Source: Pelomyxa schiedti (Eukaryota > Protista > Evosea). Taken from it: 57,376 nucleotides of DNA. The notes beneath the pieces are model-generated. The model made no database searches. It was given only the letters and a program-made list of their open reading frames with translations, and was not told the DNA's origin. The number at the start of each line of letters is the position of its first letter. Position 1 is the first letter of the stretch. Positions 9,191-57,074 of this stretch are shown in pieces. Position numbers and translations under genes: made by a program. The stretch is taken from assembly GCA_020536535.1 (NCBI GenBank), contig JAHLWZ010000120.1, forward strand, positions 1 through 57,376, in the 5' to 3' direction.

Positions 9191-9316
9191 CAGGATAATA
9201 TTGCACTATGTGGGTTCTCCTCAGAAAAAGGTGAGTTCAAATGAATGGACACGGTATGGAATGAGAGGCTTGAGGTTCTTTTTAGCGAGGATCGGTGTTG
9301 ATTATAAGAAACGGCA

Positions 9317-11405
9317 ATGGATCAGCGGCGTAGTAACGCCATCAGGCACATTCTTGACACATCACGTGTTGTGTGGGACAACGTGGTGGCCGCAGGATGG
9401 CTCGACGCCCGGCCCCTGCACTCCCGCGCCCCCACGCTCTTCCTGGGCGTGGAACTGTTCCGCGCGGCCGAGGCCATGTTCCCCCTCGTCGCCCTCGCCT
9501 GCTCCCGCGTCCTGCGTCGCGTCGCCGAGGGCAACGGCCCTCGCTCGCGGGCGCTGTGGGCCGCGGGAATGGCCGGCAGCGGGGCGTGCGTGGTCTCGCC
9601 CCATCGCCGCTGGGGCGGTGAGTCGCAGCACAGCGGCGACGCGGGGCGTCGGCGGCGGTGCACGATCAAGGAGGCGGGGTGGGACGCGGGCAACGTGGCT
9701 GCCGCTCGCTCCTTGTTTGGCGGCGGAGGCGAGTGTGGTATCGCGCTTCCCTTGGTCATTGTGGGATGGGCGCAGGGTCCCTGAATGGAGTGATGGAGCG
9801 GGTGCGGCGGCATTGAGGAATGATGTGCTGAGTATGTGAAGTCAGGGTGTGATGGATACGGGTGGAGACACTTGGAGGGTGCCAAGTGGCTGGCGTCTGC
9901 GTTGCGTCTTGGGGTTGACGACTCGTGGGTGTTCCATGCAGTCCTGAAAACGGCTTTCTGGAATGGGTGTATGGATGTTGTCAAGTGGCTGGAGAGTGAG
10001 TTTGACGTAGTGGAAAAACTGCCACGCACTAATCAGCTGAACCTGATTGATTTGTGTGCTCTGGTGAGGCACCCGAAAATCTGAAGTGGTGGGTTGAGAA
10101 CTTCCCTGGCCTCTCTTCAGTCAGTTTCCTGTTGACAAGGCTGGTTACGAATGAGCGTGGCACTACTGAACTGTGCCAATGGCTTAGAGATCAATTTCCA
10201 ACAGAGGTTATAAATACCTACTCCTTGGGCTACATACAGAATGCGAGTCTCGGGAAGTGGGCACTTTCGTATTGTCCCGTTTGGCCAAGGGAAGAAACCC
10301 TGAACCGAATGTGTAAATCCATTGGTGAGGTGAGCTTCGTGGAGTGGCTCATCACTGGATGGAACTTCACCCCAACAGCTGAGACCTTTTTTTCAGTGTG
10401 CTCCACACCCAGAGGTGGATGTGGTCTTCCACAGTGGCTCTCAGCAAGGGTGAAACTGAGCCCCTCTGACATTCAGGTCTCCCTCGAGTGTGCACTTCGT
10501 TCAAACAACACGGCAATTGCGGACTGGTTGGAGAGCACTTATAGTGTCATGAGAGCTGTGAATTCGTGTGCTGAGTCTCCTGGTGCCATGCTCCTTGAAA
10601 TATGCAAGGAGTTTGGTGATTGGTCGGACAACGTGGATGGACTTCTCTGGTTCCTTCAGCACCCGGAACATCCCGAGCAAATACCTGCAGGTACACGAGG
10701 GAATTTCAGTGGCCCTGCACTATTGTCACACAAACATGGCTTTGCACCTCCTCAAAGTGTTCCCCAAGCACGAACCACAACAGGGAGGCATATTCCTGGG
10801 GTCTATCTTGGAGGAATTTATGGGATTTGGTAATTTTGGACTGCAAAAGCTGGTCACCTTGTTTGACTGCTCCTTCTTCACCAGAGACATGGTCACAAAT
10901 GCCATGCTTGGCAATTCATTCTGCCCCAGATCAGGCAAAACGGTAAAGTGGTTCATCGTGCACTTCCACCTTGAAGACACCCACATCAAATTGAATCACC
11001 AGTCTTCTCTTCTGCCTTCTCCAGATGAAGAAAATCAACTGCATGGAGTGGCTCATTGATTCCTTTGGAATCACCCTTGACGAGGTGGGTTCTTCCCACC
11101 AACACTGCACTCTTTGACCTCAACAAACAAACCAACCAACAAACAAACAGGTCATTGATATGCTCCAGTTCTGGCTGCTACACATGGACACTTCTTATCA
11201 AGACGACTTTGACTTCACCCTGGAAACGTGGAAGATGATTCTGCACAAATTCCCAAGGATAGACGCCGATGTGATACGCAGCACCTCCTTGATGCTGGTC
11301 GCCGTGAATTCCCCTTCCGTCGCCGCGTTCACAATGCGCAAGTTCGGCATCACCATCGACGAAATTCGCCGTCAGGTGGAGATCACTGGTAATCATTCCA
11401 GTTAA
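9317..11405 (+). pseudogene. ankyrin-like 'SRVVWD' family pseudogene (B1)
   Basis: Colinear with the intact 47457-49736 gene along its whole length, including the single intron and last exon (LETWKMILHKFPRIDADVIR). It needs about five frameshifts (near 9740, 9830, 10060, 10690, 11000) to stay in register. Confidence 0.85.
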
Positions 11406-15171: not shown

Positions 15172-15435
15172 ACTAATTTTTAAAGCAGAAAAAAGTTTTC
15201 TGGTACAAATATTTTCAGACCCCACAGTATTTTTTTGATTACAATGGATGATGTTCAACGTGGTGGAGGGATGCTGGCACTACCAGTTCCAGATAGGTTG
15301 CAGGATTTATTGTTTAAAGTGGACAACATCTCCAACCAAAGCAAACACTTTTTTTTTTTTTGGAAAATGAGGGGTCCTCTATCTGAAACAGTATCTCTTT
15401 TGTTTTTTATCACAAGAGATGATGGTGCTACCCAC

Positions 15436-17856
15436 TTAAAGTTTTCTTTTGGTTGAAGTTGGATTGTGAAACATACAGTACAGGTTTCCATTAGCACTCA
15501 CAGCAGAACGCATACTGAGGGTGCAACTGCACGTGTCACCTGTTTCATTTATTGTGTTAGTGTTGGTTGGCATTTTAAAATTGGATGGGCATACATTTGA
15601 AGCACTCTCTGTGATAAAGCCTTCCATTAAACGCTTGTGTGTTCATGTTTCCGTTCCACACCTCTGAGTGACACCTTGGACATGAGTCCCCATAGAGCGT
15701 GTCACTCACCCCCAATTTCGACGACTTTGTTTTGGCTGTTAATCTGGGTGGGTTCCCTTTTGGTGCGGCACTTGACTGACTCTTCACTTGGCGCCTAGGC
15801 TGCGCCACCTCTGGTGGCTCTTGGTCTTCCTCCTGATCTGATGCATCTGGCTCGCCCTCCACATTCCAGTCTTCCAACCCCACCTCACTGGAAGGAGATG
15901 CTTCCTCATCAGCAGCTGCCTCATCGTCATCATCATTGCAAGCCCCTGGGGAGGCTGCGTTTCTGCCACACGAGGAAGTTGTGGATGTAGTAGTAGTAGT
16001 AGTAGTAGTAGGGCTCGCTGCCGCCGTTGTTGCCGAGGCCGATGCTGATGATGTAGTGGTGGTGGCTGTGCTTGCACGTTGGTTCGCATTGTCAACGAGT
16101 TTGCGGATTTTTCCAACCAGCTTGTTGATGTTGTCCTTGCTCGGCGGGGTGGATATCTCAAGCCTGCTTGCGATGCTATCTAGTAGCCCAAACAGGGCGG
16201 TTCCTTCTTGGCGCCGCAGTATTACCTCTTCCGCCTCTTGCATGAGCCTGTATGTGCTGACCACGTCGTCACTTGATGGACCGGTGTGTGGCTCCAGCAG
16301 GAGAACCTTCACTCTTTGAGGGATGAAGAGGTGGTCCTGTAGGACTGCTAAATCTAGCGGGATTTGGCGAAGGCGGCAGATCATCCAGTTGGAGACTTTC
16401 ATGAATTGCTCCTTTGTCTTCCAAACAGCGTAGACGAACATGTACAGGTCGTAGGGGTGCACCTTCTGACGATTGTGGGCATGTGCAATGACTTGGGCCA
16501 TGCAGCCGAGCTTCACCCGCCTGCGGTCAGTGAGCAGAGAACCGCCGTGAGTTTCTGTAGTTTCATCCACTTGGTGCTTCTCTTGCTCAAGTCTAACAAC
16601 AAACTTATCAAAGTCAAAAAGAAGTGGTTGCAGCTCTTCCGGGAACGGGTCGGGGATAGCTTCCTTGGCCGCCTTGGCAAAGTCTCTCACAAAGGGGAAG
16701 TCCATTCTAGGTTCAGGGAAGTCTGCTGGTGGACTCTTGTGAAAGTTGTACAGCATACGCTTGTCGGATATCCCATCAACAAATACTCGCAGGAGAAATC
16801 TATCAAGGAGGGCTCCTTGGCTCGACTCCAGCGGAATCTCATTGCTCGCAGAGAAGACGGTGTGTAAACAGGATGGAACCATTTTCTCACCGTCATTGAA
16901 CTGATCCTTGTTCAGGATTGAAAGCAGAACTGTGAGGGTCGATAGAGGTGCCTTGAATATCTCATCCAAGAAAGCCGTCACGCAATTATCCGCGCAAATG
17001 TGGTTCTTTCTGTCGCGTATAACTTTCTTGTCTCTGTTCAGCACCACAAGGTCAACGGGTCCCACAATATCATCCATGAAGGTTCCAGCGTGCAGTGTGA
17101 GTTCAAAAAATGTGTTCGGTTCTATGTTGCACCCGTACCGCAGCATTGTGCGTGCCATCATGCTCTTGGCCGTACCTGGCGGGCCAAGCAATAGACAGTG
17201 CTCGCCCATCAAGAGTGCAACCAATCCAACAATTGTCGCCTCTTCCCTCTCGATGCAGCTAAGTGCCACCCCTTCCATGAATCTTTTCAGCTTCACGTAC
17301 ACTGGCGACGCCAATGCCATGCTCGATGAAGGTGATGATGTAGCAGTTGTTGCCGCCGTCGTTTGGGTGGCGCCTGGAGCAAGTACTGGTGAAGGTGTCA
17401 CCGGCGTTTGTGATGCTGGGGGGCTTGGAATTGGAGTCGGCGCACCGGTAGCTGGTGCCGTCGCCGTAGCCAATGCTAATGAACTCGATGTTGCTTGTGG
17501 TGGCGGCGTCGTGGTGGGTGCTGCAACATTGCAGCCCACTGCCGTCCCTTGGCGAGCTGGCGGAGTGTCGAAGACTGGTGGCGAAAGCACTTCCTTCGGA
17601 GGCGTTAAGTTCCCTCAAGCGTAAAAACTCGTTTGGTGGTTGGAAAAAACGAAAAGGAACTTGGGGGGGAAAAAAAAAACAAAACACAGAAATTTCAGCC
17701 ACAACTAACCGTTGGTGGTGAACGCACATTCTCGTCACTATGGTAAGGGGGAGCCTGAGTGTGTGGCTGTGCCGTCGCTGTGGCATTTCCCCTTGGCTTT
17801 GTTGAGTCCGGCCCACCCTTGGCGCCTCCTCCTCGTCGTCCTTTGTTGCGCCCCAT
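15436..17856 (-). CDS. RavA-like MoxR-family AAA+ ATPase with C-terminal LIM domain (~740 aa, 3 exons)
   Basis: Exons 17856-17728, 17593-15595 and 15539-15436. Walker A GPPGTAKS, Walker B FLDEIFKA, sensor ASNE, Arg finger ALLDRFLLR, TDRR. Splicing the 55-nt intron gives CPRC-x19-H-RE-C-FK-C-DT-C-x17-C-MF-H, a canonical LIM. Confidence 0.88.
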
Positions 17857-18155: not shown

Positions 18156-21100
18156 ATGGCAACTTCCCAGGCTACTGCCACCGCAACGTCGTTGGCTAGG
18201 GATGTTGTTGCCTCTCTTCCAGTTGCCGACCTTGTAGAGGCGTATGTTGTCCTTTCTTCTTTGGTTTGTTCGTGCTTTGTTTTTGTTTTTGTTTTTGTTT
18301 TTGTTTTTGTTTTTGTTTTTGTGTTTTTTTAACCCTATTTCAAGATTTGAGCAGCAGGTAAACAATGCACTCTCTAAGGTTCGACACTCTTTCCAAAGAA
18401 TAGTGTCGGGCACAGGCGTAAAGGGCACCAAAACCACAATTGGTTGCACCTTACAGTTCGATGTGAAATCCGTTGAAGCGTTGCTTCAAATCCTCCCGTC
18501 AATACTGGGCTCATTCCAAGTTACGCTGCCTTCTGATGTATGGCTTAGCTGTATTGAGAGCACTGAAATTGAGTGCCACTGTAAATGGGATTTGAAGGCT
18601 GCTACTCCAATCACGCAGAATTCGGGCACTACTGCCGCACTTATTGCACAGAAGCTCATGCCCGCTTCCATTGAGATCAAAATTGAGCGTTGCATTGTCA
18701 TAGCACTCAAGGAACACAAGTGGAAGTTTTCTGTTTCCAGCAAGTCAGTTGAAACTGTATTTCGTTGTCTGAAGAAACTCCTGTCCACCGCTATCGAAAT
18801 TCCGCCAGAGCTTTTGGAGTTACGGTTTCTTCAGCCCTTGCTCAGCAAAATAAATTTGGAAATTGCTGGCATATTTGGGGAGCCGAAGTCTATCAAAGTA
18901 AATATGAAAGAAAAAGTTGTCTCTCTTTCCTTGCTGAGGAAACCCTCCTGGGCATGGGATATTTGTATTGAAAAGAAATCTGTTTCCCAGGCACTCGAAA
19001 AGTTGGGGAGTCTGGGTATCAGTTTACCAAATTGTTCCTTTCTCGATTCCGTTCTTGACAACCTCAAAGTCACGGTTCATGCGGGCTACAGTTCTGGCTC
19101 TATTGTTCTCAAAAATCTGCACCTCCAGGATAATGAGGGAACTATATCTATTGGTGGGAAAAAGCCTTCTACAAGCAGTTGGGAGTGGACTGTCACTTGC
19201 GATAGCAAACCGGCAATTGCAGCTCTCAAGCTATTGACCCAAGTTCTCCCCATCAGAATACCGATCCCCACTTGCTTTGATGACTTGCTTGCCAAGTTGC
19301 AACTAAGCTTCAATGGAATCTTGGCTGGTGAAAAACCCTTCACAGTGAAAACTTTGAACATGTGGAATACCGAAAAAATTCTCGCCATCAGCTTGGAGAA
19401 AAACTTTGAGTGGAACATCGCAATTGACAGGAAGCCTGCAGACCAGGCGCTTAAGCTGCTTTCGGATATCGTGAAAGCTCTTCCAGGCAGTCCATGCTTG
19501 CCAGACACATCTTTCCTTGACCCGCTTCTCAGTAACCTTGAAATCACGTTCCATGCCACCGTCGGCATCAGCAAGTTTAAGTTCTCCCTGCAGCTGCAAG
19601 ATAGCGAACGTATTTTATCTGTGAGCTTGCAGAGCGAATCAAGGGTATGGGAAATTGCGATATGCGACAAGCCTTTGCAGAAGGCCTTAAACTTGATCAA
19701 CAAGATATTTACAAGTTTCCCGGACCTGCACTTTCTGGACCCTCTCACCAGCAAGTTGCAGCTGGGCTTTCGTGCCATAATTGGGTCTGGTCAACCATTC
19801 AGCATCAAAACACTTCAACTGCAAGATCCCGAAAAGATTCTAGACGTTTGTCTGCCGCATGGTGCCGACTCCTGGTCCTTTTCCATTCAAGAAAAACCTG
19901 CAGAGAAGGCTTTCCTGATGCTAAGGTCTTTCACATCTTCGTTTTTACCATTGCAAATGGAGTCCCTTCAATTCATGGACGCATTTCTCTCGCACTTAAC
20001 AGTAAGCCTGCATGCAAGACCACCTAAGTTCACAATTTCCCACTTTGAACTTTGCTTCATAGCCGGAAAATTCAAGGTCAGGACCCCACCCCACAATTAT
20101 CTGAAACTTCTAAACTTATTTATTCTTCACATAGGCACTGATTACGTACAAGGAGGGTGAATGGATATTCAAAACAGAGAAGTTCACCCTGCAGGATGTT
20201 ATTCAGGCAACGGAAGTTATACCGGGCCTCACCACTGCCCTGTCACCCATTCGAACCAAAATTGGAGATTGTGAGTTCTTGTCCAAGATCGTTTCCAGTT
20301 TCGTTGTCTCTGCTGAAGTTAGACTGTACCCTAATTTCGAGGTGTGCCGCTTTGAGGCCACCTACGAAAGCTTGCTTCTCCTTGGAATGGAACTTACAGT
20401 TTGCTGCCGGTTTCAGGACCAAAGATTCACCATAACGTGCAGCTCGAAGCGGCCTGTAAGCCTGGCCGAAATACTTTCCAGCTTTGGCATCGATTGCAGT
20501 GAAGTACCAGGACTCGGCGGCGCTTTGAAAGGCATTCAGCTCCAGGTTGTTGAAGCTACATTAGGCGTGAAGCCTACGTCTATATTCGTCAACCTTGCAG
20601 TTTCAGCTGGCAGCGCCAACGCTTTTGTATACGTTTTCAAAGAGGGTGAGCACAGTGTCTTGAGTGCCAAGCTGAACCCTCACTCCAAGGATTTGTTTGA
20701 CCTTAAGGGTATGATAGGCGTAGAAGTCATCGAGCTGGGAGTCGTGTATGTTTCCAACAACTTTGATGCCGAGTCGACACCCCAGTGTCTTATTCCTACG
20801 GTCAAGGATTCGGCGCACGGATTTTCACTTAGTGGCAAGTTGCAACTGTTTGGTTGGCTCCCAGAAACGCTGCACTTTGCTGGCCGGCAGTTTGACTTTG
20901 TGTACTCCCTCGAGAAAAATAAAATTTCGATCAGCATGCCTTCTATTCCCAATGCTACCCTGAACCTATCTCTTTCTACCAAAAGCGTTGACATGAAGTG
21001 GAAAACAGATATCGCTGGTCTTTCCATGGATATGTCCATTGGGGCAAGTCTTTCAGACATGAGGGTCATGGCGTCTCTCTGCCTAAATGGGCCTATTTCT

Positions 21101-24100
21101 TTTCCTGCAGGATTGCCAATATTGAGTAATTTGCAGATTAACTCGCTGAAAGGTTCGATGGCTGTTTCTCCTTCAGAGTTCTCCGGCAGTTTTGGAGCGT
21201 CCCTGTCCATTAAAGGCTGTGACCCCACACCCAAACTTGAAGCTTGCATATGCTTGACCTCTGCAGAACCTCACATCCGTGAGATTTACTTCGATGCAAC
21301 CAATCTGAGCTTCAGTTCTATTTTCAGGGCGGTTGGACTGCGACCTGAAGCAATCTCCTGGATGGATAAAATCTTCTCGATTTATAAGCTTGCAATGCTC
21401 ATAAAAATAGCAACTGGAAGCTCTTGCATGCCCCCAGATATGATCACAAACGAGAAAATACGCGACTTTGTCGCCCCACCCAGAGGTCAAGGGACAGTTT
21501 TTGTATTTGAATGTCATGTCAATTTACTTGGTGTGAAGCCGTACTTGTTTGCTGCAGCAGATATTGGCCCAGAGCTGCGTCTCAAAATCGAAGTTTCCGT
21601 GCCAGCATTTGAGGTGAAAATCAAGTCGTTCACATTGCTGACCCTGAATGGAGGGAACCCTTCAGCACCACTGACAGGAAATTTCGACCTTGATACCGCA
21701 ACGAAGACGCTGACGGGTGACTTCAAGGGCTCCCTCAGCATTCTCAGTTGTATGAACATCGCCTGTACAATGAACTTAAAAAAGTCTGGAGAGAAGAGGA
21801 CAAGGATGGATCTTCACGTGCTGATAAACTTGCTGGGCATTTCACTTGAAGGAAGCTGCTTCGTGCTTCTGGAGACTCCTTCCTTTCCCCTGAGTCTTTC
21901 ACCTGTGCCTTTTCCGAAATCAGCCAAACTGGATCTTCGCATGACAAGTAAAGGAGGAGTCCTTGGCACTCTCATAAAGTCCCTCTCAGACGCCGTCCAC
22001 GGATTTGTGGAAACGCTCACTAATGCAATAAACGAGATCACTAACAAAATTGAAAGAGAGAGCGAAGGGAAGTGGTGGGCTCCGTTCGCTAAAGTTGCAA
22101 CAGCATTACTGAAGGTTGCAAACTTTTTACTGGAAAAGGCTCAACAGGCTCTCGATTTTGTTGCTTCAGTTGCCAGGTGGATCGCTTCTAAAGGACTCGA
22201 CATCAATTACTTTTCAATTGGAGGGGAAGTTGGTGGTGAGGACGGAGTCGAGTTCTACGTCTTTATTGAGTGCAAAGTCTTTGGGATATCCTTAAAAGGA
22301 GGGGTTCATCTCAGGCTGGCGAGCTGGCTTAAAGATCTCTGTAAAAAGATTGCTCAAATGATTTGCAATGGAAGAGCTGGTGGTGGGGAACATGGCAATC
22401 AGCTGGGTGATTATTATGAAGGTGAAGATGATGAGGATGAATCGGGGAAAAGATACTTCCGCAACCGTTGCCCGGGGACTGGGACCAAAACTGAAGATGT
22501 GGTACTGGATGGTTTTAATGTGCATTGTACGGGAGGTGAGTCGAAATTTACCAAGCTGCAGGAGGCAAAAGACAAACTTGAGAAGCAGCTCTCTGACCCG
22601 AGTAGCAACCTCAATATGGAGCCTCCAGAAGATAACCCCAACTCAGAACCACCCCCCAGCAATAATAACAATAAGGACTCTCCTCGCAATGATCAGAAAC
22701 CACCACCACCACCCAAACCCAATACCAACTCTTCACCCCCCACCAAGCAGGAAAGACAACAGTCATTCCAATGCCAGGACCCATTTACTCACTGCGGTGT
22801 ATGGGGAGAAATGGGAGGTGACCCATTCAACTATGAGGGAAGTCCTTTGGGGGAAAGGGAGCCAGTAATAATGCCCCTGCCCAAAGAGTGCAAGCACTGC
22901 CACAAGCCCTTTAATGAGCAAACAACCACCTCAGCCGATGTTGACCGTCACAACAATTTTGAATGCGAGCAATACCCTCTGAAATGCATATATTGCAAGA
23001 AAGAGATTCCCCTGATACCACCTGGAACTACCGCACAACGGATGACAGCTCATCTGAAGCAATGCAACAACGCGGAGATTGCATGCCCATACTGCTTCAA
23101 GTCGTTCCCGAAATTAGTCTTTAATCAGCACGTGAGGGGATGCCAGCCTCTAAATTGCCCTGCAGCTGGCTGTCGCAGGAAGCTCCAAGGCTGTTGCCAC
23201 AAATGGAAAGCCTGTCCCTTGTGCAAAGGTCCATTCCAAGATTCAATTCAGACCCACCTTAGGACCCAGTGTAAATCGTTGACGATGTGCTGCCCAAACG
23301 AGTGCGGCGAAACTGGCCTCTGCAGGCGTGATCTGGAGACACACTTCCAGGAATGCAACAAAGCGAAGTGGATGTGCAGTCACTGCAGGGAATGGATCCC
23401 CTGGGTGGAATTCCCAACTCATGTTGCCAACTGTGGGGAATGGCCATGTCTGTTTTGCGGTGAGCTGACCAATTTAACTCCCTCCGAGTATGCTAGGCAT
23501 CTTGCAGAGTGTGGAGAATATAAGCGCCCATGCCCTTATTGCAGAAAAAATCTGCGCCCACGTGAACAGACTCAGCACTTGATTTGGAAGTGTATGGGGT
23601 TTAAGATAAAGTGCATTGCCGGTTGTGGCAGGTTGCTACCTGCATGCAAAATACCTGTGCACCTCAGGGACCAGTGCCAAGCCGTCCATGTAAACTGCCC
23701 AATACTGGGGTGCTCTTTAGCTTACCCACGCTCATACGAATCACAGCACCTTGGTAATGACTGCAAGTACTTCACGCATACTTGTTGCTTCAGTGGTCGG
23801 TGCTTCGAGTATTACAGGCGGCAAGAAGAGCGTGATCACTGGCAGAAGCACCACTTGCACAAACAACTTAGTGAAGTCACGGAACCAGACTGTACAGAGA
23901 ACTTGACACCAGGCAGCAATCTACGCCTGTTTTTACCAACTGACCTTCTCTACCTTGTCGATCCTCAACAAGTGCTGCATACTTACACCGAGATGCTGTA
24001 TGCAACCAACCAGGTGCTCCAGAGAAAAGAGAAGGAGTACATGAAGAAGTGCCGCTTCTGCTCACAAAACATGCGCGCGGTGTTCTTCCCGATTCATCGC

Positions 24101-25099
24101 GTCTGTCTGTGCATGAAGCAGCAGACGCGGTGCGCATACTGTGCTAAATGGGTTGTCTCCGGCAAATACTTCCAGCATGTATTCGAGGAGTGCACAGTCA
24201 CCGCCAAGTGCCGCTACTGCAACGAGCAGATGGAAAAATCGAGGCTCGTGGGGCACATGCAGCACTGCAACGGCGTTCCAGGAAGACAGCTTTGCACCAC
24301 ATGCTGGTGCATCACCGCCCACGAACCCAAAGACTGCCCGTCCAATCACGCGACGATGAGGTGCGTCGCGTGCAACAAGCTCTTTCCCACGAGATATAGG
24401 ATGAGCCACATGGCCACCTGCGAGAAGCGCCTCTGCGCGTGCCCCTTCTGCAAGAGTAGAGTTCCCCTGCGCGAGTACGACCTGCACATTCTCGGTTGCG
24501 ACGCCCCAGTGACCTGCAGGTGCGGCCAGGGATTCCAGTCCCGGGACTACTGCCGGCACCTTCTGGCATGCCCGAGCCAGGCAATCCAATGCGGCCTGTG
24601 CCAGCAGGAAGCCGACCCAGTGTCCACGTGGGCCTCGCACGTTATCTACGCCTGCCCCGTGTCGTTCCCCTGCCCTGTTGATGGCTCCGCCGCGAAAGCA
24701 GCAACAAAACCCAGCAGGTGCCCGTGCCGGCTGAGACTCTGCGACCTGGAATCTCACGTGGCGCCCGAGTCTGACGGGTCGGCAGAGTCCAGGTCTCTGC
24801 TTGCCGACGCGTGCCAATCTGTCAGGACGGTGTGCCCCGTGAGGCCCGGCCCTTGCCCGGGCGAATTCCCGATCCGGGAGCTGGGGCACCATCTGGAGCA
24901 CGCTTGCAGGTTCAACTTCGTGGGGTGCCCTCTTGGCTGCGACAAGGCCGACCTGGCTCTGAAGGATGTCGACGAGCACGTCAACGCGATGGGTGTCTGC
25001 CCGAAGCGCAAGTACATATGCCCTTGTGGAGAGAGTGATTGCCAGTGGTTTCTGTCCCAGCTCCGTTCGGGAGCACCCATACCCTGGAACGGCCTGTGA
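18156..25099 (+). CDS. ~2260-aa protein: N-terminal ~65-70-aa repeats, long beta-rich region, amphipathic helices, Pro/Asn linker, ~20 TRAF-type zinc fingers
   Basis: Exons 18156-18241, 18345-20076 and 20135-25099 join the 638-aa and 1606-aa ORFs in frame through GT-AG introns. The C-terminal third is tandem C-x2-4-C-x11-13-H-x3-4-C units (e.g. CPNECGETGLCRRDLETHFQEC, CPYCRKNLRPREQTQHLIWKC). Confidence 0.85.
18276..18322. repeat. (TTTTTG)n microsatellite in intron 1 of the giant gene
   Basis: Direct reading; about 7-8 units. Confidence 0.9.
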
Positions 25100-28953: not shown

Positions 28954-31268
28954 ATGACCGAAGGCCCTGCGGAGATACGCCGCGTCATGACGTTGTCTCG
29001 TGTGGTGTGGGACTTCGTCATCGTTCCCACAATCCTCGACCCCGCCGTCTCTCGTTGCGACTACATGACCTTCGAGGGCTGCTGCTGGCTCGCGGGCGTC
29101 GCGGACGCCCTTTTCCCCCTTGTCCCGAGGGCCTGCCGCGCACTTATGGGCGCCACCCTGACGAACTGCAACGACTCCGGCGTCGGCGAGTACACCTACC
29201 TCGTCACGTCGCGGTACGTCCCCCTCGAGTGCGCCGCGATCGTCGGGAGCACGAGGTGCATCGAGTGGATCCTGGCGCACACGAGAACGAGGAACCCGAG
29301 GAAGGAGTCCATCGAAGTGCTCGAGTCTCTTTGCATTGGTAACTAGTTCGTCACTGAAATGGGCTTATGGGATTAAATGTTACATAAATATATTAACAGG
29401 TGTTTATTGTCTCTTTAATAAGTGAATTGCGAGTCTCTTTGCATTGGGAGTTGTTAAAGCTTATATTACCATGAAGCCATAAAAAAATAACACTCCATCT
29501 ATAATATTAATATTAAATAATTGTTGTTTTGAGTTGTGAAGAATATTGTCATTGATTTGTGTAAAACGTATTGATTGTTATTGTAGGAGGAAAGCTTGTG
29601 ATGGCACAGGAGTTCGTTGACAGTGGAGATATACCGTGGAGGGGAGGCTCATTGAGGTGGCCTGTGCATGATGCTGATATGCTGGATTCCCTCAGGGAGA
29701 TGAGTGAATTCTCCACCACAAGCCTTTTATATGACGCATGCAGAGGAGGCAATTTGGCTGTTGTCAAGTGGGTCATGACGAGGTTTGTTGGCCTGGGTGC
29801 GGAGCCGTGGGAGCTTGTGGGACCGTTTGAAAATGCTCTGAGACAGGGCAATATTGAGGTTGCGCAGTGGATGGAATCCTCAACTGGTGTGGTTAACTCC
29901 TGCAAGCCACATATTGTCATACCAAATCGCCCGTGTGCTGCTAGTGTATTTTTGGATGTTGTGAAGCTCTGCATGAGGGTGTTCAAGCTGAATCGTTGTG
30001 ATATAGAGGAATGTGGCCCTGAGATTATGGCGAAGTTCATCCAGCATTGTTCAAATGAGCAAAGTGGTCACGAATTTCAGGCAGGGTGTGCGTGGATCAA
30101 AGAAAATTTTGGCATGAAGAAGTTCAGGAAGATTCGTTGGATCAAAGGCAGCAGGGGTCTCAAGTGGATCGTCACCAATTTTCCTGTCAAACCAACACAG
30201 GAGCTGCTTTCGCATGCATGCAAATCAACTGATTTGGAGCTTGTTGACTGGCTGTTTGCCAAATTGCGTTTTGGGGAAGTGACCCCAAAAACAATCAAGA
30301 GTGCATGTGCAAACGAGAAGGACAACGTCGAAATTGTGAAGAGTTTGTTGGCCAAAGTTCCACGTCCCACCCCAGATTTTGAGCGCAGCTTACTGGAGAA
30401 ATCTCTTTCCCGAAACAACACTGCCATTGGAGAGTGGTTGGATAACACATTCCACGTGATGGCAGCTGTGAATTCTGTTCCCAGCGATACAGAGAGCCTA
30501 TTCTCTAAGTTGTGCGCCAAGAACCAAGGTGGAATGGGGGGAATTCAGTGGTTCCTTTCACGTGCAACAATGCGCAACATCAGTGGAAAAACAGTTCTCT
30601 CAGCCGTCGAGGAATCACCTTGCATCACCCTCACGTTGTTTTTGATGAAGCAGTTCAATGTAAGCATTGCTCATAAGCCGTCAATCATCAGGAAGCTGCT
30701 TGAAGACGGGGATGTTTCACAGGCCAAGCAACTTGTCACCTCTGCTGAACTGTTCTCTTCATCTGAGGTTCAGGAGGCCTTTTCAGAGAGTTACCAAGTG
30801 CAGTCCGGAAAAGTGGTCAAGTGGGTGTTGCAGCAGTTTCACCTGAGTGAAGACCAAGTCAAGGTGAATGACAACCAGTTGTTGGCGAACCTGATTCACT
30901 CGAACAAGGTCGGGTGCACAGAGTGGTTCATCCACACATTCCAGGTGAGGGTGGATGAGCTAGTCAGAATGGCTGAGCGGACCAAGTGCCACGGCATCAC
31001 CTTGAGCATGTGGAAGATGCTGATGCGAGTGCTTCCTGAAATGACGGCGTCCATCGTGAGGAGCCACTTCATGAAATGGGCGGTCACGACGCCACTGCAC
31101 ACCACAGTCACAATGAGAACTCTGGGTATCACAAAGGCTGATGTAGACTCGTACAAACAAGATAGTCACGACGACGAAAGTGACGAAAGCGACGAAGGCG
31201 ACGATAGCGATGATAGTGACTACAGTGACACTGATGAGGACAGTTCCGCAGAAGACAGCGATGAATAA
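28954..31268 (+). CDS. ankyrin-like 'SRVVWD' family protein (A1), 2 exons, acidic tail
   Basis: Exons 28954-29338 and 29587-31268 join in frame (SLCIG|GKLVMAQ). Ankyrin-like motifs LLYDACRGGNLAVVKW, ALRQGNIEVAQW, HACKSTDLELVDWL. D/E/S-rich C-terminus. Confidence 0.85.
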
Positions 31269-47456: not shown

Positions 47457-49736
47457 TCAGCCAAGCCACATCCTGAACTCAGTATCGTTGTATAACCTGT
47501 CCTCAACCATTTGAAACTGGCAGCGAATTTCTTCGATGGTGATTCTGAATTTGTGCATTGTGAATGCGGCGACTGAAGGGGAATTGACAGCAACGAGCAT
47601 GAAGTGCTTCCGTATCACATCCGCGTCAATCCTTGGGAATTTGTGCAGAATCATCTTCCACGTTTGCAGGTCGATGTCAACGCTGTTTCCACGAGAAGTC
47701 GGCAACCAGAACCGGATCATATCAATCACCTGTTTGTTTGTTGAGGTCAGAGGGTGCAATGTGTGTTTGTTTTGTTTTGTTCCGTTTTGTTGAGGTCAGA
47801 GAGTGCCGTGTGCGTGTGTTTTTGGTGTGTGTTTTCACAAACACACCTCATCAAGGGTGATTCCAAAGGAATCGATGAGCCACTCAAAACAGTTGATTTT
47901 CTTCCTCCGGAGAAGGCAGAAGAGAAGACTGTTGTGATTCAATTTGATGTCTGTGTCTTCAAGGTGGAACTGCATGATGAACCACTTGACCGTTTTTCCT
48001 GACGTGGGCAAGAATGAATCAGCAGTTATGAGGTTTGTGACCATGTCTCTGGTGAACAACGAGCAGCAGTCCAACAATGTGACCAGCCTTTGCAGTTCGA
48101 AATTATCCGATTCCACAAATCTGGGCAAGAGAGACCCCAAGATCACAGTGTCTCCGCGTTGTGGTTTGTGTTCTGGGAACACTTTCAAGAGGTGCAGAAC
48201 AATGTTGTTGTGGCAATAGTACAGGGCCACTGCAATTGCCTCGTGAACTGAAGCTCCAGTTATTTTCTCCCGATGTTCCAGGTGTTGAAGGAACCAGATA
48301 AGTCCATCCACAGGATCCTCGTAATCACCAAACTCCCTGCATATTTCAACGAGCATGGCACCAGGAGCCTCAGGGTGCGAGTTCACAGCTCCCATGACAC
48401 CGTAAGTTCCCTCCAACCAGTCCGCAATTGCGGTGTTGTTCGAACGAAGTGCACGCTCAAGGGAGACCTGAATGTCAGCGGGGCTCAGTTTCACCCTTGT
48501 TGAGAGCCACTGTGGAAGACCGCTTCCACCTCTGGGTGTGGAGCACACAGTGAAAAATGTCTCTGCTGTTGGGGTGAAGTTCCGTTCAGTGACGAGCCAC
48601 TCCACGAAGCTCACGTTGCCAATGGATTTGCACATTCGATTCAGGATTTCATTCCTTGGCAAAGTGGGAGAAGTTGAGAGTGCCCACTTGCCGACACTTG
48701 CATCCCGTATGGAAGCAAATGTGTAGGCATTTATAACCCCTTCCGGAAATTGATCTCTCAGCCATTGGCACAGTTCCACGGTGCAACGCTCGTTTCTGAT
48801 CAGATTTGACAACAAGTAACTGCCTGAAGTAACACTGGGGAAGTTCTCAACACACCACTTCACATTTTCAGGTGCATCACCAGAAGTACACACACCAAAC
48901 ATGACTGGTGTGGGAAACTTTTCCACCACATCAAACTCGCTCACCACCCACTTGGCAACGTCCATGCAGCCACGCCGGAGAGCCATCCTCATGACAGCAG
49001 GGAAGACCCACGAGTCGCCAGCCCCAACACCCAACGCAGACGCCAGCCACTTGGCCCCCTCCAAGTTTCTCCACCCGTGTCCGCCTTTCACCCCGCACCC
49101 CGACTTCACATACTCCAGCACATCATTCCTCAGTTCACCCACTCCGTCACTCTCGGAACCGCTTGTCGAGTTTCCCCCTGCTGCTGCAGCCGTTCCAATC
49201 AAACACCCACGCCATTCGGGGACCCGGTACCCATCCCACAATGACCAAGGGAAGGTGCCCCCCCCGCTCATGTGATCTCCCTCGCAACCTCCGCCTCCGC
49301 CTCCGCCGAACAAGGAGCGAGCGGCGGCCACGTTGCCCGAGTCGCACAGCCCGCACAGCACCCACCCCGCCTCCTTGACTGTGCTCCGCCGCCGACGCCC
49401 CCCTTCGCCGTTGTGCTGCGGGTCCCCCCGCCGGGGATGGTGGTGCGAGACAATCCACGAGACGCACGACCCGCTGCCGGCCATTCCCGCGGCCCACACC
49501 GCGCGCGAGCGGGAGCCGTTCTCCTCGGCGATGCGGCGCAGCACGCGGGAGCAGGCGAGGGCCACGAGGGGGAACATGGCCCCGGCCGCCCGGAACACGT
49601 CCACGGCCACGTCGACAGTGGGCTCGCGGGCATGCAGGTACGAGTCGCCGAGCCACCCTGGCGCCACCACGTTGTCCCACACAACACGTGACGTGTCCAG
49701 AATGTGCCTGATCGCGTTACCGCCCTCCATGGCCAT
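47457..49736 (-). CDS. ankyrin-like 'SRVVWD' family protein (B2), 2 exons
   Basis: Exon 1 49736-47847 (AIRHILDTSRVVWDNVV, MFPLVALACSRVL, ALRRGCMDVAKW, ALRSNNTAIADWL), intron 47846-47730, exon 2 VIDMIRFWL...FRMWLG*. Confidence 0.85.
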
Positions 49737-50536
49737 TGTAAAAAATTTCTACAATAGAATAGAGTTCTTTCTTTAGTCTTAGATGACAGAGGCTAAGGAA
49801 TCTCCAATCAGGGACAAAGAATTGATTGCCTCATTGTAGTGGTATTAGTGCTCTTGTAAAAGCACCGAGATAGCTTTATCATCAAACTCTGGGCAGAGGA
49901 AGGGTGGTGTTGGCCGCAGAAAAGTCGCAGGCAACTCCTGTGTTGGAGTCCAAACAAGGAAACCCCAGCCCTAACAACTTCCCGGCGAGTACTGCCCATT
50001 TGTCCCAGCAGTCGAGCAACTCAGGGCGGTGAACTCACGGCAATGGTGTCAATGTGGCCCCAGAGTCCCTGTACAGATGAGCAAATCACAGTAGTTCGGC
50101 AGTACCCAGCCCGGCACTCTCAGTATATGTTATCGGGAAGTGCATTGTGACCCGCTCCCATTTGAAAGATAAAAAAGCTATCCATTTTTCATTATGGGGC
50201 TGAAGGAAAGGAGAAAATGTACCGGTTGGGTTTTTTTGAGGAAAATTCACAGCCACTGCTGAGCGGCATTTCCTATTGGTACTGCACTTCATCCCCTTAA
50301 TGGATTCCAGAGGCAGTAAAATAAAACATTTGCGTGAAGCTACTTCGTAATGAATCTTTTCTTAGCCTCATTTTCAAGAGAGTTTATGTGTAGGAGTCTT
50401 ATGCATACGTTTTACAGAAGCTTGTAAGTCAACAGAAGTTGTGAATCTCTATTTGTACTACAAGGATAACAGCAAGCCATTTCTTTCCAAAAGGTTTTAC
50501 TTCTGGGTATTGGATGTGCGGCTGAGAGGGCAAATT

Positions 50537-54830: not shown

Positions 54831-57074
54831 TCAGCTTCCGTTTTCTGACCCTACACTCAAACCAAGCCACATTCTGAGCTCAGGTGTGAGCCGTGCCCCG
54901 CTTTCTGACCTTTCATAGTCTCCTCCACATCCATCAAACTGACAGCGAATCTCCTCGATGGTGATGCCGAATTTGTGCATGGTGAACGTGGCGACTGACG
55001 GAGAATTTACAGCAACCAGCATGAAGTGCTTCCGTATCACATCCGCGTCTATCTTCGAGAATTTTCTCAGGATCATCTTCCATGTCTCCAGGTCAATGAC
55101 AAAGCTGTTTCCCCGTGACGGGCGCAAACGGTTCCCAAACATATCAATGACCTATTTGTGGATAAAGTCAGAAGTTACTGATGCATTTTGGTGTGTTGGC
55201 ACTGCACTCACCTCATCAAGAGTGATTTCAAAGGAATCAATGAGCCATTCTACGCAACTCGGTTTCTTTCTCGTGATAAGGTTGAAGAGAAGGCTGTTGT
55301 GATTCTGTTTGATGTGCGTCCCTTCAAGGCGGAACAGTGCGATTGCCCGCTTCACGCATTTGCTTGACCAGGGCCGAAATGCTGGGTGGGTCATGCACTT
55401 TGTGACCATCTCTCTTGTGAATAACGAGCAGTCAAACAAAGCCTCCAGACTTCGCAGTTTGACTTGATCCCCTTTCAGAAATATCTTCAAAATAGACTCC
55501 AATAACTGCCTGTCTTCTTCTTGCGGTTTGTATTTGGGAAACACCTCCAGAAGTTGCAGTGCAAAGTTAACACGACAGTACTTCAGCGTCGCTAAAAATG
55601 CCCCGCGAACTGAAGCTGCAGATATTTGCTCTGGATGTGGGATGTGCTGAAGGAACCAGTGCAGTCCATCCACCCCGCCTGTGAAATAACCTAAATCCTC
55701 ACACATTCTAACAAGCATGGCACCAGGAGCCTCAGGGCGCGAATTCACAGCTCCCATGACGCCGTAAGTGCTCTCCAACCAGTCCGCAATTGCGGTGTTG
55801 TTCGCATGAAGTGCATGCTCAAGGGAGAGCTGAATGTCAGCAGGGTCCAGTTTCACTTTCGTTGAGAGCCACTGTGGAAGAGCGCATCCACCTTGGCTTG
55901 TGGAGCACACAGATACAAACGTTGTAGCTGTTGGGGTGAAGTTCCGTTCAGTGATGAGCCACTCCACGAAGCTAATGTCCTGAATGCATCTGCACATTTC
56001 GTTCAGAGTTGCTTCACCAGCCTCAATGGGAAAAGCTGAAAGTGCCCACTTTCCAATATTTACACTTCTTATTGAAGCCAAGGTATAGTCGATAATTGAC
56101 TCTTCTGGAAAATGGTTTTTCAGCCATTGGCACAGTTCCACAGTACTGCGTTCATTCCTCATCACAGTTGACAACAGGTGACCGCCTGTAGAAAGGGTCG
56201 GGAAGGTCTCAACAAACCACTTCACATTTTCTGGTGCGTGACCAGAGCCACACCTACTAGCCAAGTGACTTTGACTCGTGGGTGAAGGAAACTTTGTCGC
56301 CAAATTAAACTCACTCATCAACCACCCCGCAACCTCCGTCGCGCCGTACCAGAGAGCCAATCTAAGACTCGCCAGAAAGACCCACGAGTCATCAGCCCCA
56401 ACACGCAATGCAGACACAAGCCACTTCACAGACTCGAGGTGCTTCCACCCGCGGCCACTCACGCCACCCCCTGACTTCACATACTCCAGAACATCGTTCC
56501 TCAGTTCACTCACATCAGTCTCGGAACCTATTATGGGTGTGTTTGCCGCTGTAGCGGTTCCGTCCAAGTCCCGGCACCATTCAGGGACCCTGTAACCATC
56601 CCACAATGACCAAGGGAAGGTGCCCCCGCCGCTCATGTTATCTCCCTCGCCACCGCCGAACAAGGAGCGAGCGGCGGCCACGTCGCCCGAGTCGCACAGC
56701 CCGCACAGCACCCACCCCGCCTCCTTGACTGTGCTGAGCCGGCGCCTGCGGGTGCCCTCGCGCGAGTCCCGCGCGTGGTGGGCGACGATCCACGAGACGC
56801 ACGACCCGCTGCCCGCCTTGGCCGCGACCCACAGTGCGTGGTAGTGCGAGCGGCCGCCGTTGAGGGTGCGGCGCAGGACGCGGGAGCAGGCGAGGGCCAC
56901 GAGGGGGAACATGGCCCCGGCTGTGCGGAACACGTCCAGGCTCTTCGCCCCGGGTTCCTGCGGGAGCGACGAAGAGGTTTCGAGCCACCCTGGGGCCACC
57001 ACGTTGTCCCACACCACCCTCGAAGTGTCCAGAATGTGCCTGGTTGCGCTACCGTGTATGTCGTTTGCGGTCAT
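54831..57074 (-). CDS. ankyrin-like 'SRVVWD' family protein (B3), 2 exons
   Basis: MTANDIHGSATRHILDTSRVVWDNVV...; intron after ITLDE; last exon VIDMFGNRL...LETWKMILRKFSKIDADVIRKHFMLVAVNSPSVA...*. Same structure as B2. Confidence 0.85.

What the first reader, a model, noticed from the sequence alone, without database searches (positions are those of the whole stretch)
15436..17856. Bacterial-type RavA/MoxR AAA+ ATPase fused to a complete eukaryotic LIM domain hidden by an intron
Seen: the core carries GPPGTAKS, FLDEIFKA, ASNE, ALLDRFLLR and TDRR. The raw ORF ends in half a LIM (CPRC-x19-HRECFKC). Removing the 55-nt GT-AG intron 15594-15540 completes it (CDTC-x17-CMFH), with exact LIM spacing. 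Known: these ATPase motifs mirror E. coli RavA (GPPGIAKS, FLDEIWKA, ASNELP, ALYDRM, SDRRW), a prokaryotic MoxR subfamily of chaperone-like remodellers, and LIM domains are eukaryotic cytoskeletal/protein-interaction modules. Inference: a laterally acquired RavA-like motor gained Thr/Pro-rich linkers and a LIM targeting module. The ~2-kb exon holding the ATPase core has no intron, and the introns fall only in the flanking additions. I know of no described MoxR-LIM protein.
Basis: partly seen in the sequence, partly recalled or inferred. Interest (0 to 1): 0.87.

Follow-up and report, generated by a model that had tools for sequence, protein, structure and literature searches.

The report
Amoeba MoxR ATPase with LIM tail
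A gene of the anaerobic amoeba Pelomyxa schiedti encodes a RavA-like (MoxR-family) AAA+ ATPase ending in a genuine LIM zinc-finger domain that is completed only by splicing out a 55-base intron. The fusion is real and so far one of a kind, but the ATPase belongs to a small, already eukaryotic gene family and is not a fresh bacterial import.

Summary
The window is Pelomyxa schiedti contig JAHLWZ010000120.1. The gene at 17856..15436 (minus strand) has an intact MoxR-type AAA+ core (Pfam bpMoxR 3e-27, AAA_5, AAA_lid_8). Its closest solved structure is E. coli RavA. Removing the intron 15594..15540 gives a full LIM domain (Pfam 40 bits, E 4.9e-10, against 17.6 bits unspliced). Of 345 possible GT/GC-AG pairs nearby, only this one works. 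The public gene model uses the same intron, but it also removes 51 in-frame bases that hold the first LIM cysteine.

The core is not a RavA orthologue and is not a recent bacterial import. It sits in a strongly supported clade (100/98) in which every named member is eukaryotic: four Pelomyxa paralogues, blastoclad fungi and a prokinetoplastid. The clade's C-terminal modules vary: LIM, protein kinase, and a weak caspase-like match. No other MoxR-LIM protein was found, and no paper mentions both terms.

The likely function, an ATP-driven hexameric remodeller aimed by LIM at a cytoskeletal or other partner, is inferred and untested.

The parts
17710..17856 (-). Exon 1. The ATG is at 17856..17854. 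It encodes a basic N-terminus (MGRNKGRRGGG...).
   Evidence: Sequence; annotated model P0001 mapped back onto the locus.
17594..17709 (-). Intron 1 as annotated: 116 nt, GTTAGT...GAAG, GC 0.41. Both keep the frame.
   Evidence: DNA similarity to the paralogue L006 starts at about 17639, inside this intron, so the acceptor region is shared between the two copies.
15595..17593 (-). Exon 2, 1999 nt, with no stop codon. It holds the N-linker, the whole AAA+ module, the C-terminal extension, the long linker and the first LIM zinc finger.
   Evidence: ORF 15575..17590; exon mapping.
17321..17593 (-). Pro/Ala/Thr/Ser-rich low-complexity N-terminal linker.
   Evidence: Composition P19 A19 T18 S13 in 95 residues.
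17386..17445 (-). Annotated 60-nt in-frame 'intron' (GTGCGC...CACCAG). It is probably coding sequence.
   Evidence: GC 0.62, length a multiple of 3, no in-frame stop. The homologous stretch 'SQTPVTPSPV' is annotated as coding in paralogue P0281.
16754..17290 (-). AAA+ alpha/beta domain (Pfam bpMoxR PF20030; AAA_5 spans 17200..16796). Walker A GPPGTAKS 17185..17162; Walker B FLDEIFKA 16972..16949; sensor 1 SASNE 16852..16838; arginine-finger region ALLDRFLLR 16813..16787.
   Evidence: Pfam 3e-27 / 95.5 bits and 1.3e-14; motif coordinates. These positions are invariant across 76 relatives.
16382..16552 (-). AAA+ lid (Pfam AAA_lid_8) with sensor 2, LTDRRR, at 16534..16517.
   Evidence: Pfam 2.8e-08; AlphaFold model pLDDT above 90 across this region.
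16307..16459 (-). Helical extension after the lid, with the motifs HPYDLYMFVYAVWKTKEQ (16459..16406) and LQDHLFIPQRVK (16342..16307). The recent duplicate in L006 shares the gene only up to about this point (blastn match ends near 16254; protein model residue 499).
   Evidence: Alignments A1/A2. The long bacterial forms carry a matching 'NHLWV' motif. Duplication boundary.
15683..16072 (-). Disordered linker of about 130 residues, first Thr/Ser/Ala-rich and then acidic.
   Evidence: Composition A20 S20 T20 E11 P10 D10 in 129 residues.
15675..15725 (-). Annotated 51-nt in-frame 'intron' (GTCGTC...CCAAG). It is probably coding. Removing it deletes SSKLGVSDTLYGDSCPR, which includes the first zinc ligand of the LIM.
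   Evidence: GC 0.55, length a multiple of 3. LIM scores 32.2 bits with it removed and 40 bits with it kept.
15595..15682 (-). First LIM zinc finger, CPRC-x19-HREC, followed by FK and the first base of the next Cys codon.
15540..15594 (-). 55-nt phase-1 intron, GTATGC...ACTAAC(branch-point-like)...AAACAG, splitting the codon of the fifth zinc ligand (T|GT).
   Evidence: Its length equals the median of the 23 annotated introns in the four paralogues.
15436..15539 (-). Last exon: second LIM zinc finger (C)DTC-x17-CMFH, tail NPTSTKRKL, and the stop codon at 15438..15436.

Best explanation
This is a genuine nuclear gene of Pelomyxa schiedti encoding a protein of about 745 residues. From N to C terminus it has a basic, Pro/Thr-rich low-complexity start, a catalytically intact MoxR-family (RavA-like, Pfam bpMoxR) AAA+ module with its lid and a conserved helical extension, a disordered Thr/Ser-rich and acidic linker of about 130 residues, and a single C-terminal CRP-type LIM domain. 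The LIM is split between its two zinc fingers by a 55-nt intron.

The ATPase is one of at least four Pelomyxa paralogues. They belong to a small clade of MoxR ATPases whose named members are all eukaryotic: Archamoebae, blastoclad fungi and a prokinetoplastid, plus unplaced metagenome and transcriptome sequences. In this clade the motor is conserved and the terminal modules differ. The motor's ultimate origin is most simply prokaryotic, because the wider family is overwhelmingly bacterial and archaeal and there it is paired with a vWA gene. That origin predates the Pelomyxa duplications. The LIM was joined to one copy by recent exon or module shuffling just after the 'DHLF' motif.

Inferred mechanism (not shown): like RavA and other MoxR proteins, it assembles into an ATP-hydrolysing hexameric ring that remodels or assembles a protein complex. 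The six LIM domains on long flexible tethers would act as a multivalent targeting module that brings the ring to a LIM-binding partner. The actin cytoskeleton is the first candidate, because the LIM most resembles the actin-associated CRP/MLP, CRIP, EPLIN and MICAL LIM domains.
For: Identity and integrity:
- Pfam bpMoxR 95.5 bits, AAA_5 and AAA_lid_8.
- Walker A, Walker B, sensor 1, Arg finger and sensor 2 all match columns that are invariant or nearly so in 76 relatives.
- The AlphaFold model has pLDDT 86.7 and pTM 0.82. Its best PDB matches are RavA (E 1.6e-15), then the MoxR protein CHU_0153.

LIM:
- 40 bits, E 4.9e-10 after splicing.
- Best solved relatives are CRP1 and MLP.
- The splice solution is unique. 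The intron is typical in size, GC content and branch-point motif. The database model uses the same intron.

One protein, not two: the first LIM finger lies in the same uninterrupted 671-codon ORF as the ATPase.

Eukaryotic setting: the contig's other genes carry F-box, TRAF zinc-finger, ankyrin, MORN and RCC1 domains.

Clade:
- A discrete top group appears in a search of 1.84 billion representatives, named.
- Tree support is 100/98 for the 14-row clade.
- Monophyly of the Pelomyxa copies is not rejected (p-AU 0.198).

Module swapping:
- P0281 is 85% identical in DNA up to about 16254 and then continues into a kinase.
- Other members carry zf-RanBP or ankyrin domains or have borderline caspase hits.

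Prokaryotic kin have a vWA gene immediately downstream in all 3 loci checked.
Against: - I saw no transcript or protein evidence. Splicing of 15594..15540 and retention of 15725..15675 rest on sequence logic.
- The assembly comes from whole-genome-amplified single cells, so a chimeric join inside the low-complexity linker cannot be formally excluded.
- Hexamer formation, ATPase activity, zinc binding and any actin link are untested. LIM subclass assignment from 54 residues is weak (E about 1e-5 to 1e-6).
- No vWA partner, the usual MoxR co-factor, was found in the window or beside the paralogues.
- The tree is unrooted and the clade sits on a long branch, so the direction and timing of any transfer are inferred from numbers, not shown.
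- The taxon labels of transcriptome-derived members could reflect prey or contaminants.
Confidence: 0.7

Rival explanations
1. One reading: a recent lateral transfer of a bacterial RavA gene into the Pelomyxa lineage, followed by the addition of linkers and a LIM domain.
For: The wider family is overwhelmingly prokaryotic. RavA is the closest solved structure. The AAA+ core is a single intron-free exon in a genome reported to average 7.4 introns per gene.
Against: The best prokaryotic and viral matches are only 27-34% identical over near-full-length alignments and come from scattered phyla, so no donor stands out. The nearest relatives are the Pelomyxa paralogues, Apiculatamorpha, Allomyces and Blastocladiella, in a 100/98 clade. 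E. coli RavA groups elsewhere (100/95). The RavA equivalog cut-off is missed by far (84 against 681 bits). There is no LARA domain.
Confidence: 0.08
2. An artefact: the LIM and the ATPase are not parts of one protein, because of an assembly or amplification chimera or a gene-model merge, or because the intron is not spliced and the protein ends in half a LIM.
For: The genome was assembled from multiple-displacement-amplified single cells. The database model of this gene contains two dubious in-frame introns. The paralogue model P0281 may merge an upstream gene. No homologue with the same architecture exists.
Against: The ATPase, the linker and the first zinc finger share one open frame of 671 codons. 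A half LIM followed 55 nt later by a perfectly spaced, in-frame second half with canonical GT..AG and ACTAAC signals is not expected by chance: it is 1 of 345 candidate pairs, with Pfam E 4.9e-10. A chimeric junction would have to fall inside the linker without breaking the frame.
Confidence: 0.07
3. The gene is one member of a eukaryotic conflict-type or cell-death-type module family descended from prokaryotic MoxR-vWA defence systems. In this view the NTPase is a regulated switch, the variable C-terminal domain (kinase, caspase-like, ankyrin, LIM) is the effector or adaptor, and the LIM copy acts as an adaptor or decoy and not as a cytoskeletal remodeller.
For: The paralogues carry a protein kinase and have borderline Peptidase_C14 hits with the catalytic Cys apparently replaced. 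This recalls the mostly inactive caspase domains in the effector position of bacterial MoxR-vWA ternary systems (PMC7159879). Pfam's best model is the MoxR of such a system. Two of the four paralogues lie beside paralogous giant TRAF-zinc-finger proteins, and one lies near a RING/B-box protein. Among the prokaryotic kin, one locus has a SAVED gene next to the MoxR-vWA pair and another has a NERD gene.
Against: The caspase assignment is weak: E 1.9e-4 and 1.7e-3, an AlphaFold model at pLDDT 45, and a blank PDB profile search. PADLOC gives no hit for the MoxR parts. No vWA partner was found. TRAF-type, RING-type and kinase genes may simply be abundant in this genome. LIM is not a known effector domain.
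Confidence: 0.15

Closest known systems
E. coli RavA (regulatory ATPase variant A; PDB 3nbx, 4upb, 6q7l)
   Same: A single MoxR-type AAA+ module with the same Walker A, Walker B, sensor 1, Arg-finger and sensor 2 motifs and the same lid (Pfam AAA_lid_8). It is the best sequence match (E 6e-21) and the best fold match (E 1.6e-15, about 320 aligned columns, 24-25% identity). RavA forms hexamers; that is established knowledge and was not tested here.
   Different: Only RavA residues 12-289 align, so there is no LARA domain. There is no adjacent viaA-type vWA gene. The NCBIfam RavA score is 84 against a cut-off of 681. RavA sits in a different, well-supported part of the tree. The Pelomyxa protein adds low-complexity linkers and a LIM domain.
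Prokaryotic bpMoxR-type MoxR ATPases (Pfam PF20030; the MoxR of the MoxR-vWA-beta-propeller ternary systems, Kaur et al. 2020, PMC7159879) and their 375-550-residue bacterial and archaeal relatives
   Same: This is the best Pfam family (95.5 bits). The long bacterial forms share the post-lid extension and an 'HLW/HLF' motif. Identity over the core is about 30%.
   Different: The prokaryotic genes sit directly upstream of a vWA gene in all 3 loci checked. The Pelomyxa gene is spliced, has no vWA neighbour, and carries eukaryotic-type terminal modules.
The unnamed eukaryotic MoxR clade: Pelomyxa KAH3757805.1, KAH3760538.1 and P0281; Allomyces AMAG_02560 and GGF31_002659; Blastocladiella H9P43_002763; Apiculatamorpha EP00759_P003441
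   Same: The same motor with clade-specific features: 'LHAG' in place of 'LLTRF', an insertion before sensor 2, and the 'WKT..Q' and 'DHLF' motifs. Support is 100/98.
   Different: None of the others has a LIM. They carry a kinase, a possible pseudo-caspase, zf-RanBP domains, coiled coils or unassigned domains instead.
CRP/MLP-type LIM domains (CSRP1 PDB 1b8t, MLP 2o13, CRIP 1iml)
   Same: The full eight-ligand pattern with CRP-like spacing, and local matches such as CPRC...H+xCF+C..C.
   Different: A single LIM without the glycine-rich repeat. The last ligand is His. It is attached to an AAA+ ATPase. Similarity is modest (E 5e-6).
Midasin, VWA8 and dynein (the eukaryotic descendants of MoxR-like AAA+ domains)
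   Same: They belong to the same AAA+ superclade (per PMC7159879 and PMC3495828).
   Different: They have six tandem AAA+ modules. None of them is among the 50 fold matches listed or the four PDB sequence matches.

Membership tests
MoxR family of AAA+ ATPases | A P-loop AAA+ core with Walker A, Walker B, sensor 1, arginine finger and sensor 2, matching MoxR-type profiles. | tested here: met
   bpMoxR 95.5 bits (cut-off 27), AAA_5 54.9 bits (cut-off 22) and AAA_lid_8 33.9 bits (cut-off 22.8). The motifs lie in columns that are invariant or nearly so.
MoxR family of AAA+ ATPases | A MoxR/RavA-like three-dimensional fold. | tested here: met
   AlphaFold model pLDDT 86.7. The top PDB matches are RavA (E 1.6e-15), then the MoxR protein CHU_0153 (E 6.5e-12), then the MCM proteins.
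MoxR family of AAA+ ATPases | A functional partnership with a vWA-domain protein. | tested here: not met
   No vWA domain was found in window ORFs of 200 aa or more. tblastn with four vWA partners against the window and three paralogue loci found nothing. A partner elsewhere in the genome could not be searched for.
MoxR family of AAA+ ATPases | Hexameric ring assembly and ATP hydrolysis. | not testable with these tools
   This needs purified protein.
RavA (orthologue group, NCBIfam NF010054) | A score above the equivalog cut-off. | tested here: not met
   84.3 bits against a cut-off of 681.
RavA (orthologue group, NCBIfam NF010054) | A C-terminal triple-helix and LARA domain. | tested here: not met
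   The sequence alignment stops at RavA residue 289. The region after the lid is a different helical extension, followed by a disordered linker.
RavA (orthologue group, NCBIfam NF010054) | Phylogenetic placement with RavA. | tested here: not met
   E. coli RavA lies in a 13-row group of otherwise unnamed sequences (100/95), separate from the 14-row eukaryotic clade (100/98).
bpMoxR (Pfam PF20030) | A score above the Pfam gathering threshold. | tested here: met
   95.5 bits against 27.
bpMoxR (Pfam PF20030) | Membership of a MoxR / vWA-beta-propeller / third-component gene system. | tested here: not met
   The 57-kb window holds no such neighbours. Eukaryotic genes are not organised in operons, so this result says little about function.
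LIM domain (Pfam PF00412) | Eight zinc ligands spaced C-x2-C-x16-23-H-x2-C-x2-C-x2-C-x16-21-C-x2-(C/H/D). | tested here: met
   CPRC-x19-HREC-FK-CDTC-x17-CMFH in the spliced model.
LIM domain (Pfam PF00412) | A score above the Pfam gathering threshold. | tested here: met
   40 bits against 22.9 for the spliced peptide, 32.2 bits for the database model and 17.6 bits unspliced.
LIM domain (Pfam PF00412) | Binding of two zinc ions and of a protein partner. | not testable with these tools
   This needs biochemistry.

The most novel reading that the evidence does not exclude
The gene is a visible tip of an undescribed eukaryotic family in which a MoxR-type AAA+ switch, inherited from prokaryotic MoxR-vWA conflict systems, has lost the vWA partner and is wired directly to interchangeable eukaryotic output or adaptor modules: LIM, Ser/Thr kinase, pseudo-caspase, ankyrin and zinc fingers. 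It would then be a protist counterpart of NTPase-plus-effector immune or cell-death machines. The LIM copy would link such a switch to the cytoskeleton.
Probability: 0.15. Interest if true: 0.75.

Novelty: new variant of a known kind. Interest (0 to 1): 0.5.

Why it matters
Single-module MoxR/RavA-type ATPases are treated as prokaryotic chaperone-like machines. The eukaryotic descendants that get discussed are the six-module giants midasin and dynein.

This gene shows that a RavA-like motor persists as a spliced nuclear gene family in scattered eukaryotes, without its usual vWA neighbour, and with terminal modules that have been exchanged recently. It gives a concrete, testable case of how a prokaryotic-type motor is re-targeted by eukaryotic adaptor domains. 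One Pelomyxa copy has a LIM domain and a near-identical copy has a kinase.

It also corrects a public gene model, which deletes the first zinc ligand of the LIM.

The practical importance is modest until expression and function are shown.

Tried and rejected
- Midasin/VWA8 affinity: rejected. None appears among the 50 fold matches listed or the four PDB sequence matches.
- RavA orthology: rejected.
- Giant-virus or phage source: a scan of IMG/VR found only matches of 26-33% identity over near-full-length alignments (short segments up to 41%) covering the AAA+ core, no closer than the bacterial matches.
- A specific prokaryotic donor: the GTDB genome scan gave 27-34% identity over near-full-length alignments (short segments up to 43%) from scattered phyla, including Thorarchaeota, myxobacteria, gammaproteobacteria, Paenibacillus and Methanomassiliicoccus. 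No donor stands out.
- Search for a LIM donor or another AAA-LIM protein using the LIM region: it found only the query itself. The tool's word and length limits make this blank weak.
- Known anti-phage defence families (PADLOC): no hit for the MoxR parts. The kinase hits are generic.
- Caspase fold of the paralogues' C-terminus: the AlphaFold model was too poor to use (pLDDT 45), so no fold search was run. The PDB profile search was blank. Only borderline Pfam hits remain.
- vWA partner: none in the window or in three paralogue loci.
- Literature: no paper contains both 'MoxR' and 'LIM domain'. Searches on eukaryotic MoxR found only the dynein/midasin discussion.
I removed that row and did not send it elsewhere.
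Full report
**What is in the sequence**

The window is the 57,376-bp contig JAHLWZ010000120.1 of the Pelomyxa schiedti assembly GCA_020536535.1. P. schiedti is an archamoeba (Amoebozoa).

Pfam assigns residues 101-279 to bpMoxR (PF20030, 95.5 bits), 131-265 to AAA_5, and 347-403 to AAA_lid_8. The last 31 residues match half of a LIM domain at E 0.005.

The frame stops at TAA just after CMPIQF. The 55 nt at 15594..15540 begin GTATGC and end AAACAG, with an ACTAAC branch-point-like motif about 19 nt before the AG. This stretch has GC 0.35 against 0.52 for the gene, and its length is not a multiple of three.

Removing it gives CPRC-x19-HREC-FK-CDTC-x17-CMFH, the canonical eight-ligand LIM spacing. 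The spliced peptide scores 40 bits (E 4.9e-10, cut-off 22.9). Its best solved relatives are the LIM domains of CRP1, MLP and CRIP. Of 345 GT/GC..AG pairs of 30-200 nt in 15300..15760, this is the only one that yields a complete LIM in frame.

**Comparison with the public gene model**

The NCBI protein (P0001, 712 aa, 'AAA family ATPase') spans exactly 17856..15436 and uses the same 55-nt intron.

- It uses the donor GTTAGT at 17709 for intron 1, not GTGCGT at 17727. This is unresolved.
- It removes a 60-nt in-frame segment (17445..17386).
- It removes a 51-nt in-frame segment (15725..15675).

Both in-frame segments are GC-rich (0.62 and 0.55), are multiples of three, and lack in-frame stops. 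Most other annotated introns in this gene and its paralogues have GC 0.26-0.49. The 51-nt one deletes the first cysteine of the LIM and lowers the LIM score to 32.2 bits. The stretch homologous to the 60-nt one is annotated as coding in a paralogue.

I therefore prefer a model of about 749 residues. The 23 annotated introns in the four paralogues have a median length of 55 nt (range 39-116, plus one of 560), so the LIM intron is typical. I could not inspect transcript data. The genome paper states that the models came from Augustus refined with PASA/EVM on single-cell transcriptomes (PMC8887013).

**Is it a eukaryotic gene?**

Other ORFs on the contig carry F-box, TRAF-type zinc-finger, ankyrin, MORN and RCC1 domains. 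The gene itself is spliced. Bacterial contamination is excluded.

Because the first zinc finger shares an uninterrupted frame with the ATPase, the fusion does not depend on any gene-model choice. Only an amplification chimera inside the linker could undo it, and that cannot be checked here.

**What kind of ATPase?**

The closest solved structure by sequence is E. coli RavA (E 6e-21), but only RavA residues 12-289 align. An AlphaFold model built on a 76-sequence alignment (pLDDT 86.7, pTM 0.82) matches RavA best (E 1.6e-15, about 320 aligned columns). The next matches are the MoxR protein CHU_0153 and then the MCM proteins. No midasin or VWA8 is listed.

NCBIfam's RavA equivalog scores 84 bits against a cut-off of 681. 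'RavA-like MoxR' is a fair description, and 'RavA' is not. All catalytic motifs fall in alignment columns that are invariant or nearly so, so the motor is probably active.

**Relatives**

A profile of the three closest sequences was searched against 1.84 billion representative proteins. It gave 7,436 hits, with a discrete top group above about 200 bits. The named members of that group are:

- two further P. schiedti proteins (KAH3757805.1 and KAH3760538.1, each 860 aa);
- several Allomyces proteins, and Blastocladiella emersonii and B. britannica;
- the prokinetoplastid Apiculatamorpha spiralis, with N-terminal zf-RanBP fingers.

The group also holds unnamed transcriptome and metagenome sequences.

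A second profile search added a fourth Pelomyxa paralogue, P0281. It is 73% identical in protein, and 85% identical in DNA over window 17433..16254. After the 'DHLFIPQRVK' motif it continues into a Ser/Thr kinase instead of the linker and LIM. Its Walker A and sensor 1 motifs are altered.

In a careful IQ-TREE analysis (98 rows, 289 columns) the 14-row eukaryotic clade has support 100/98. The sub-clade holding three Pelomyxa copies (P0281 was not in the tree), Apiculatamorpha and two metagenome sequences has 100/88. E. coli RavA lies in a separate 13-row group of otherwise unnamed sequences (100/95). The Dolichomastix and Vitrella homologues branch elsewhere. Monophyly of the Pelomyxa copies is not rejected (p-AU 0.198).

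Scans of viral contigs and of one genome per prokaryotic species found nothing closer than about 34% identity over near-full-length alignments, from scattered phyla. In three prokaryotic relatives that I examined, a vWA gene follows the MoxR gene directly, and a SAVED or a NERD gene lies upstream in two of them. No vWA gene was found near any Pelomyxa copy.

**History**

The family is numerically prokaryotic, so a transfer into eukaryotes is the simplest origin. However, the tree is unrooted, the clade sits on a long branch, and no donor is identifiable.

Whatever the origin, it predates the duplications that produced four Pelomyxa paralogues. It either predates or spread among Archamoebae, blastoclad fungi and a kinetoplastid.

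In all four paralogues the AAA+ core is one intron-free exon of 1.3-2.0 kb, while the C-terminal domains are densely interrupted. This fits an intron-poor motor joined to intron-bearing eukaryotic exons. Because the paralogues share ancestry, it counts as a single observation. The LIM/kinase pair, which diverges sharply just after the DHLF motif, shows that the C-terminal module was exchanged recently.

**Mechanism**

What is shown: intact ATPase motifs, a RavA-like fold, a long low-complexity tether and a complete LIM.

What is inferred from knowledge of RavA/MoxR proteins and of LIM domains: a hexameric ATP-driven remodeller whose six tethered LIM domains provide multivalent targeting. The actin cytoskeleton is the first candidate partner, because the nearest LIM domains are CRP/MLP, CRIP, EPLIN and MICAL.

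An alternative reading treats the family as a modular switch-plus-effector system akin to prokaryotic MoxR-vWA conflict systems (PMC7159879). It draws on the kinase paralogue, the borderline caspase hits and the TRAF-type neighbours. The caspase evidence is weak and PADLOC is silent.

**Novelty**

The protein is already in GenBank under a generic name, and its precomputed Pfam hits include LIM. It is not undiscovered sequence.

No other MoxR-LIM protein was found among the 396 proteins fetched (the LIM-pattern scan covered the 280 held; Pfam labels covered the later hits) or in the hit lists. No paper pairs the two terms. I found no description of this eukaryotic single-module MoxR clade.

I rate it a new variant of a known kind and of moderate interest. 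The fusion is real and unusual and belongs to an unstudied eukaryotic MoxR family. There are no expression or functional data, and its evolutionary story is less dramatic than the one proposed.

Noticed in passing
L006:8001-13155 (P. schiedti contig JAHLWZ010000119.1); homologous to window 17433..16254: A fourth paralogue, P0281 (annotated 1519 aa), is 85% identical in DNA across the N-linker and ATPase, then switches to a Ser/Thr protein kinase instead of the linker and LIM. Its Walker A reads GPSGTAKS and its sensor-1 Asn is Lys, so its ATPase may be inactive.
   Followed up: partly
L004:6001-9367 and L005:10001-12873 (paralogues KAH3757805.1 and KAH3760538.1): Both 860-residue paralogues end in a domain of about 250 residues with borderline Peptidase_C14 (caspase) hits (E 1.7e-3 and 1.9e-4). 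The catalytic Cys position appears to be replaced ('VIDAF', 'VLDAP'). The AlphaFold model was too poor (pLDDT 45) to confirm this.
   Followed up: partly
window 18156..25099 (+) and L004:1-4081: The 2229-residue gene transcribed divergently from the MoxR-LIM gene has a TRAF-type zinc finger (ORF residues 993-1041; PDB TRAF4 E 9e-5) and no other known domain. A paralogue (24% identity over 845 residues, E 1.6e-28) lies next to MoxR paralogue KAH3757805.1, but not next to the other two. This could be a remnant of a segmental duplication, a functional pairing, or chance.
   Followed up: partly
window about 9200..11400 (+), 29565..31265 (+), 47838..49748 (-), 55155..57083 (-): At least four copies of a gene family of about 640 residues (one copy has weak ankyrin hits) lie in this window. 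A 72%-identical copy forms the N-terminal 750 residues or so of the annotated P0281 model in L006, which suggests that model merges two genes.
   Followed up: partly
window 17445..17386 and 15725..15675 (-): Two annotated in-frame 'introns' of the public model (60 and 51 nt, GC 0.62 and 0.55, no in-frame stops) look like coding sequence. The second removes the first zinc ligand of the LIM. If short in-frame introns like these are over-called elsewhere, that could contribute to the reported 7.4 introns per gene.
   Followed up: yes
L088:2199-7290, L087:1886-6964, L102:3962-7041: Prokaryotic relatives (Archangium, a Thorarchaeota MAG, Paenibacillus aceris) have a vWA gene immediately downstream of the MoxR gene. 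In Archangium a SAVED-domain gene lies upstream, and in the Thorarchaeota MAG a NERD/zinc-ribbon gene does. These are defence-like neighbourhoods.
   Followed up: partly
P0341 (Polarella glacialis), P0007/P0056 (Dolichomastix), P0279 (Vitrella), P0130/P0004 (metagenomes): Other eukaryote-labelled MoxR homologues lie outside the 14-row Pelomyxa clade and carry other fusions: Clp_N plus vWA, APC10/DOC, or ankyrin. In the tree Dolichomastix and Vitrella branch separately, and the ankyrin pair is sister to the clade. This hints at more than one entry of this family into eukaryotes.
   Followed up: partly
L003:902-5071 (ENA metagenome contig; P0128, 1389 aa): An intron-less clade member from a metagenome has a long N-terminal region, a poly-Gln run and a Cys/His-rich stretch near its C-terminus that resembles a TRAF-like zinc finger by eye. 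Pfam did not confirm this.
   Followed up: no
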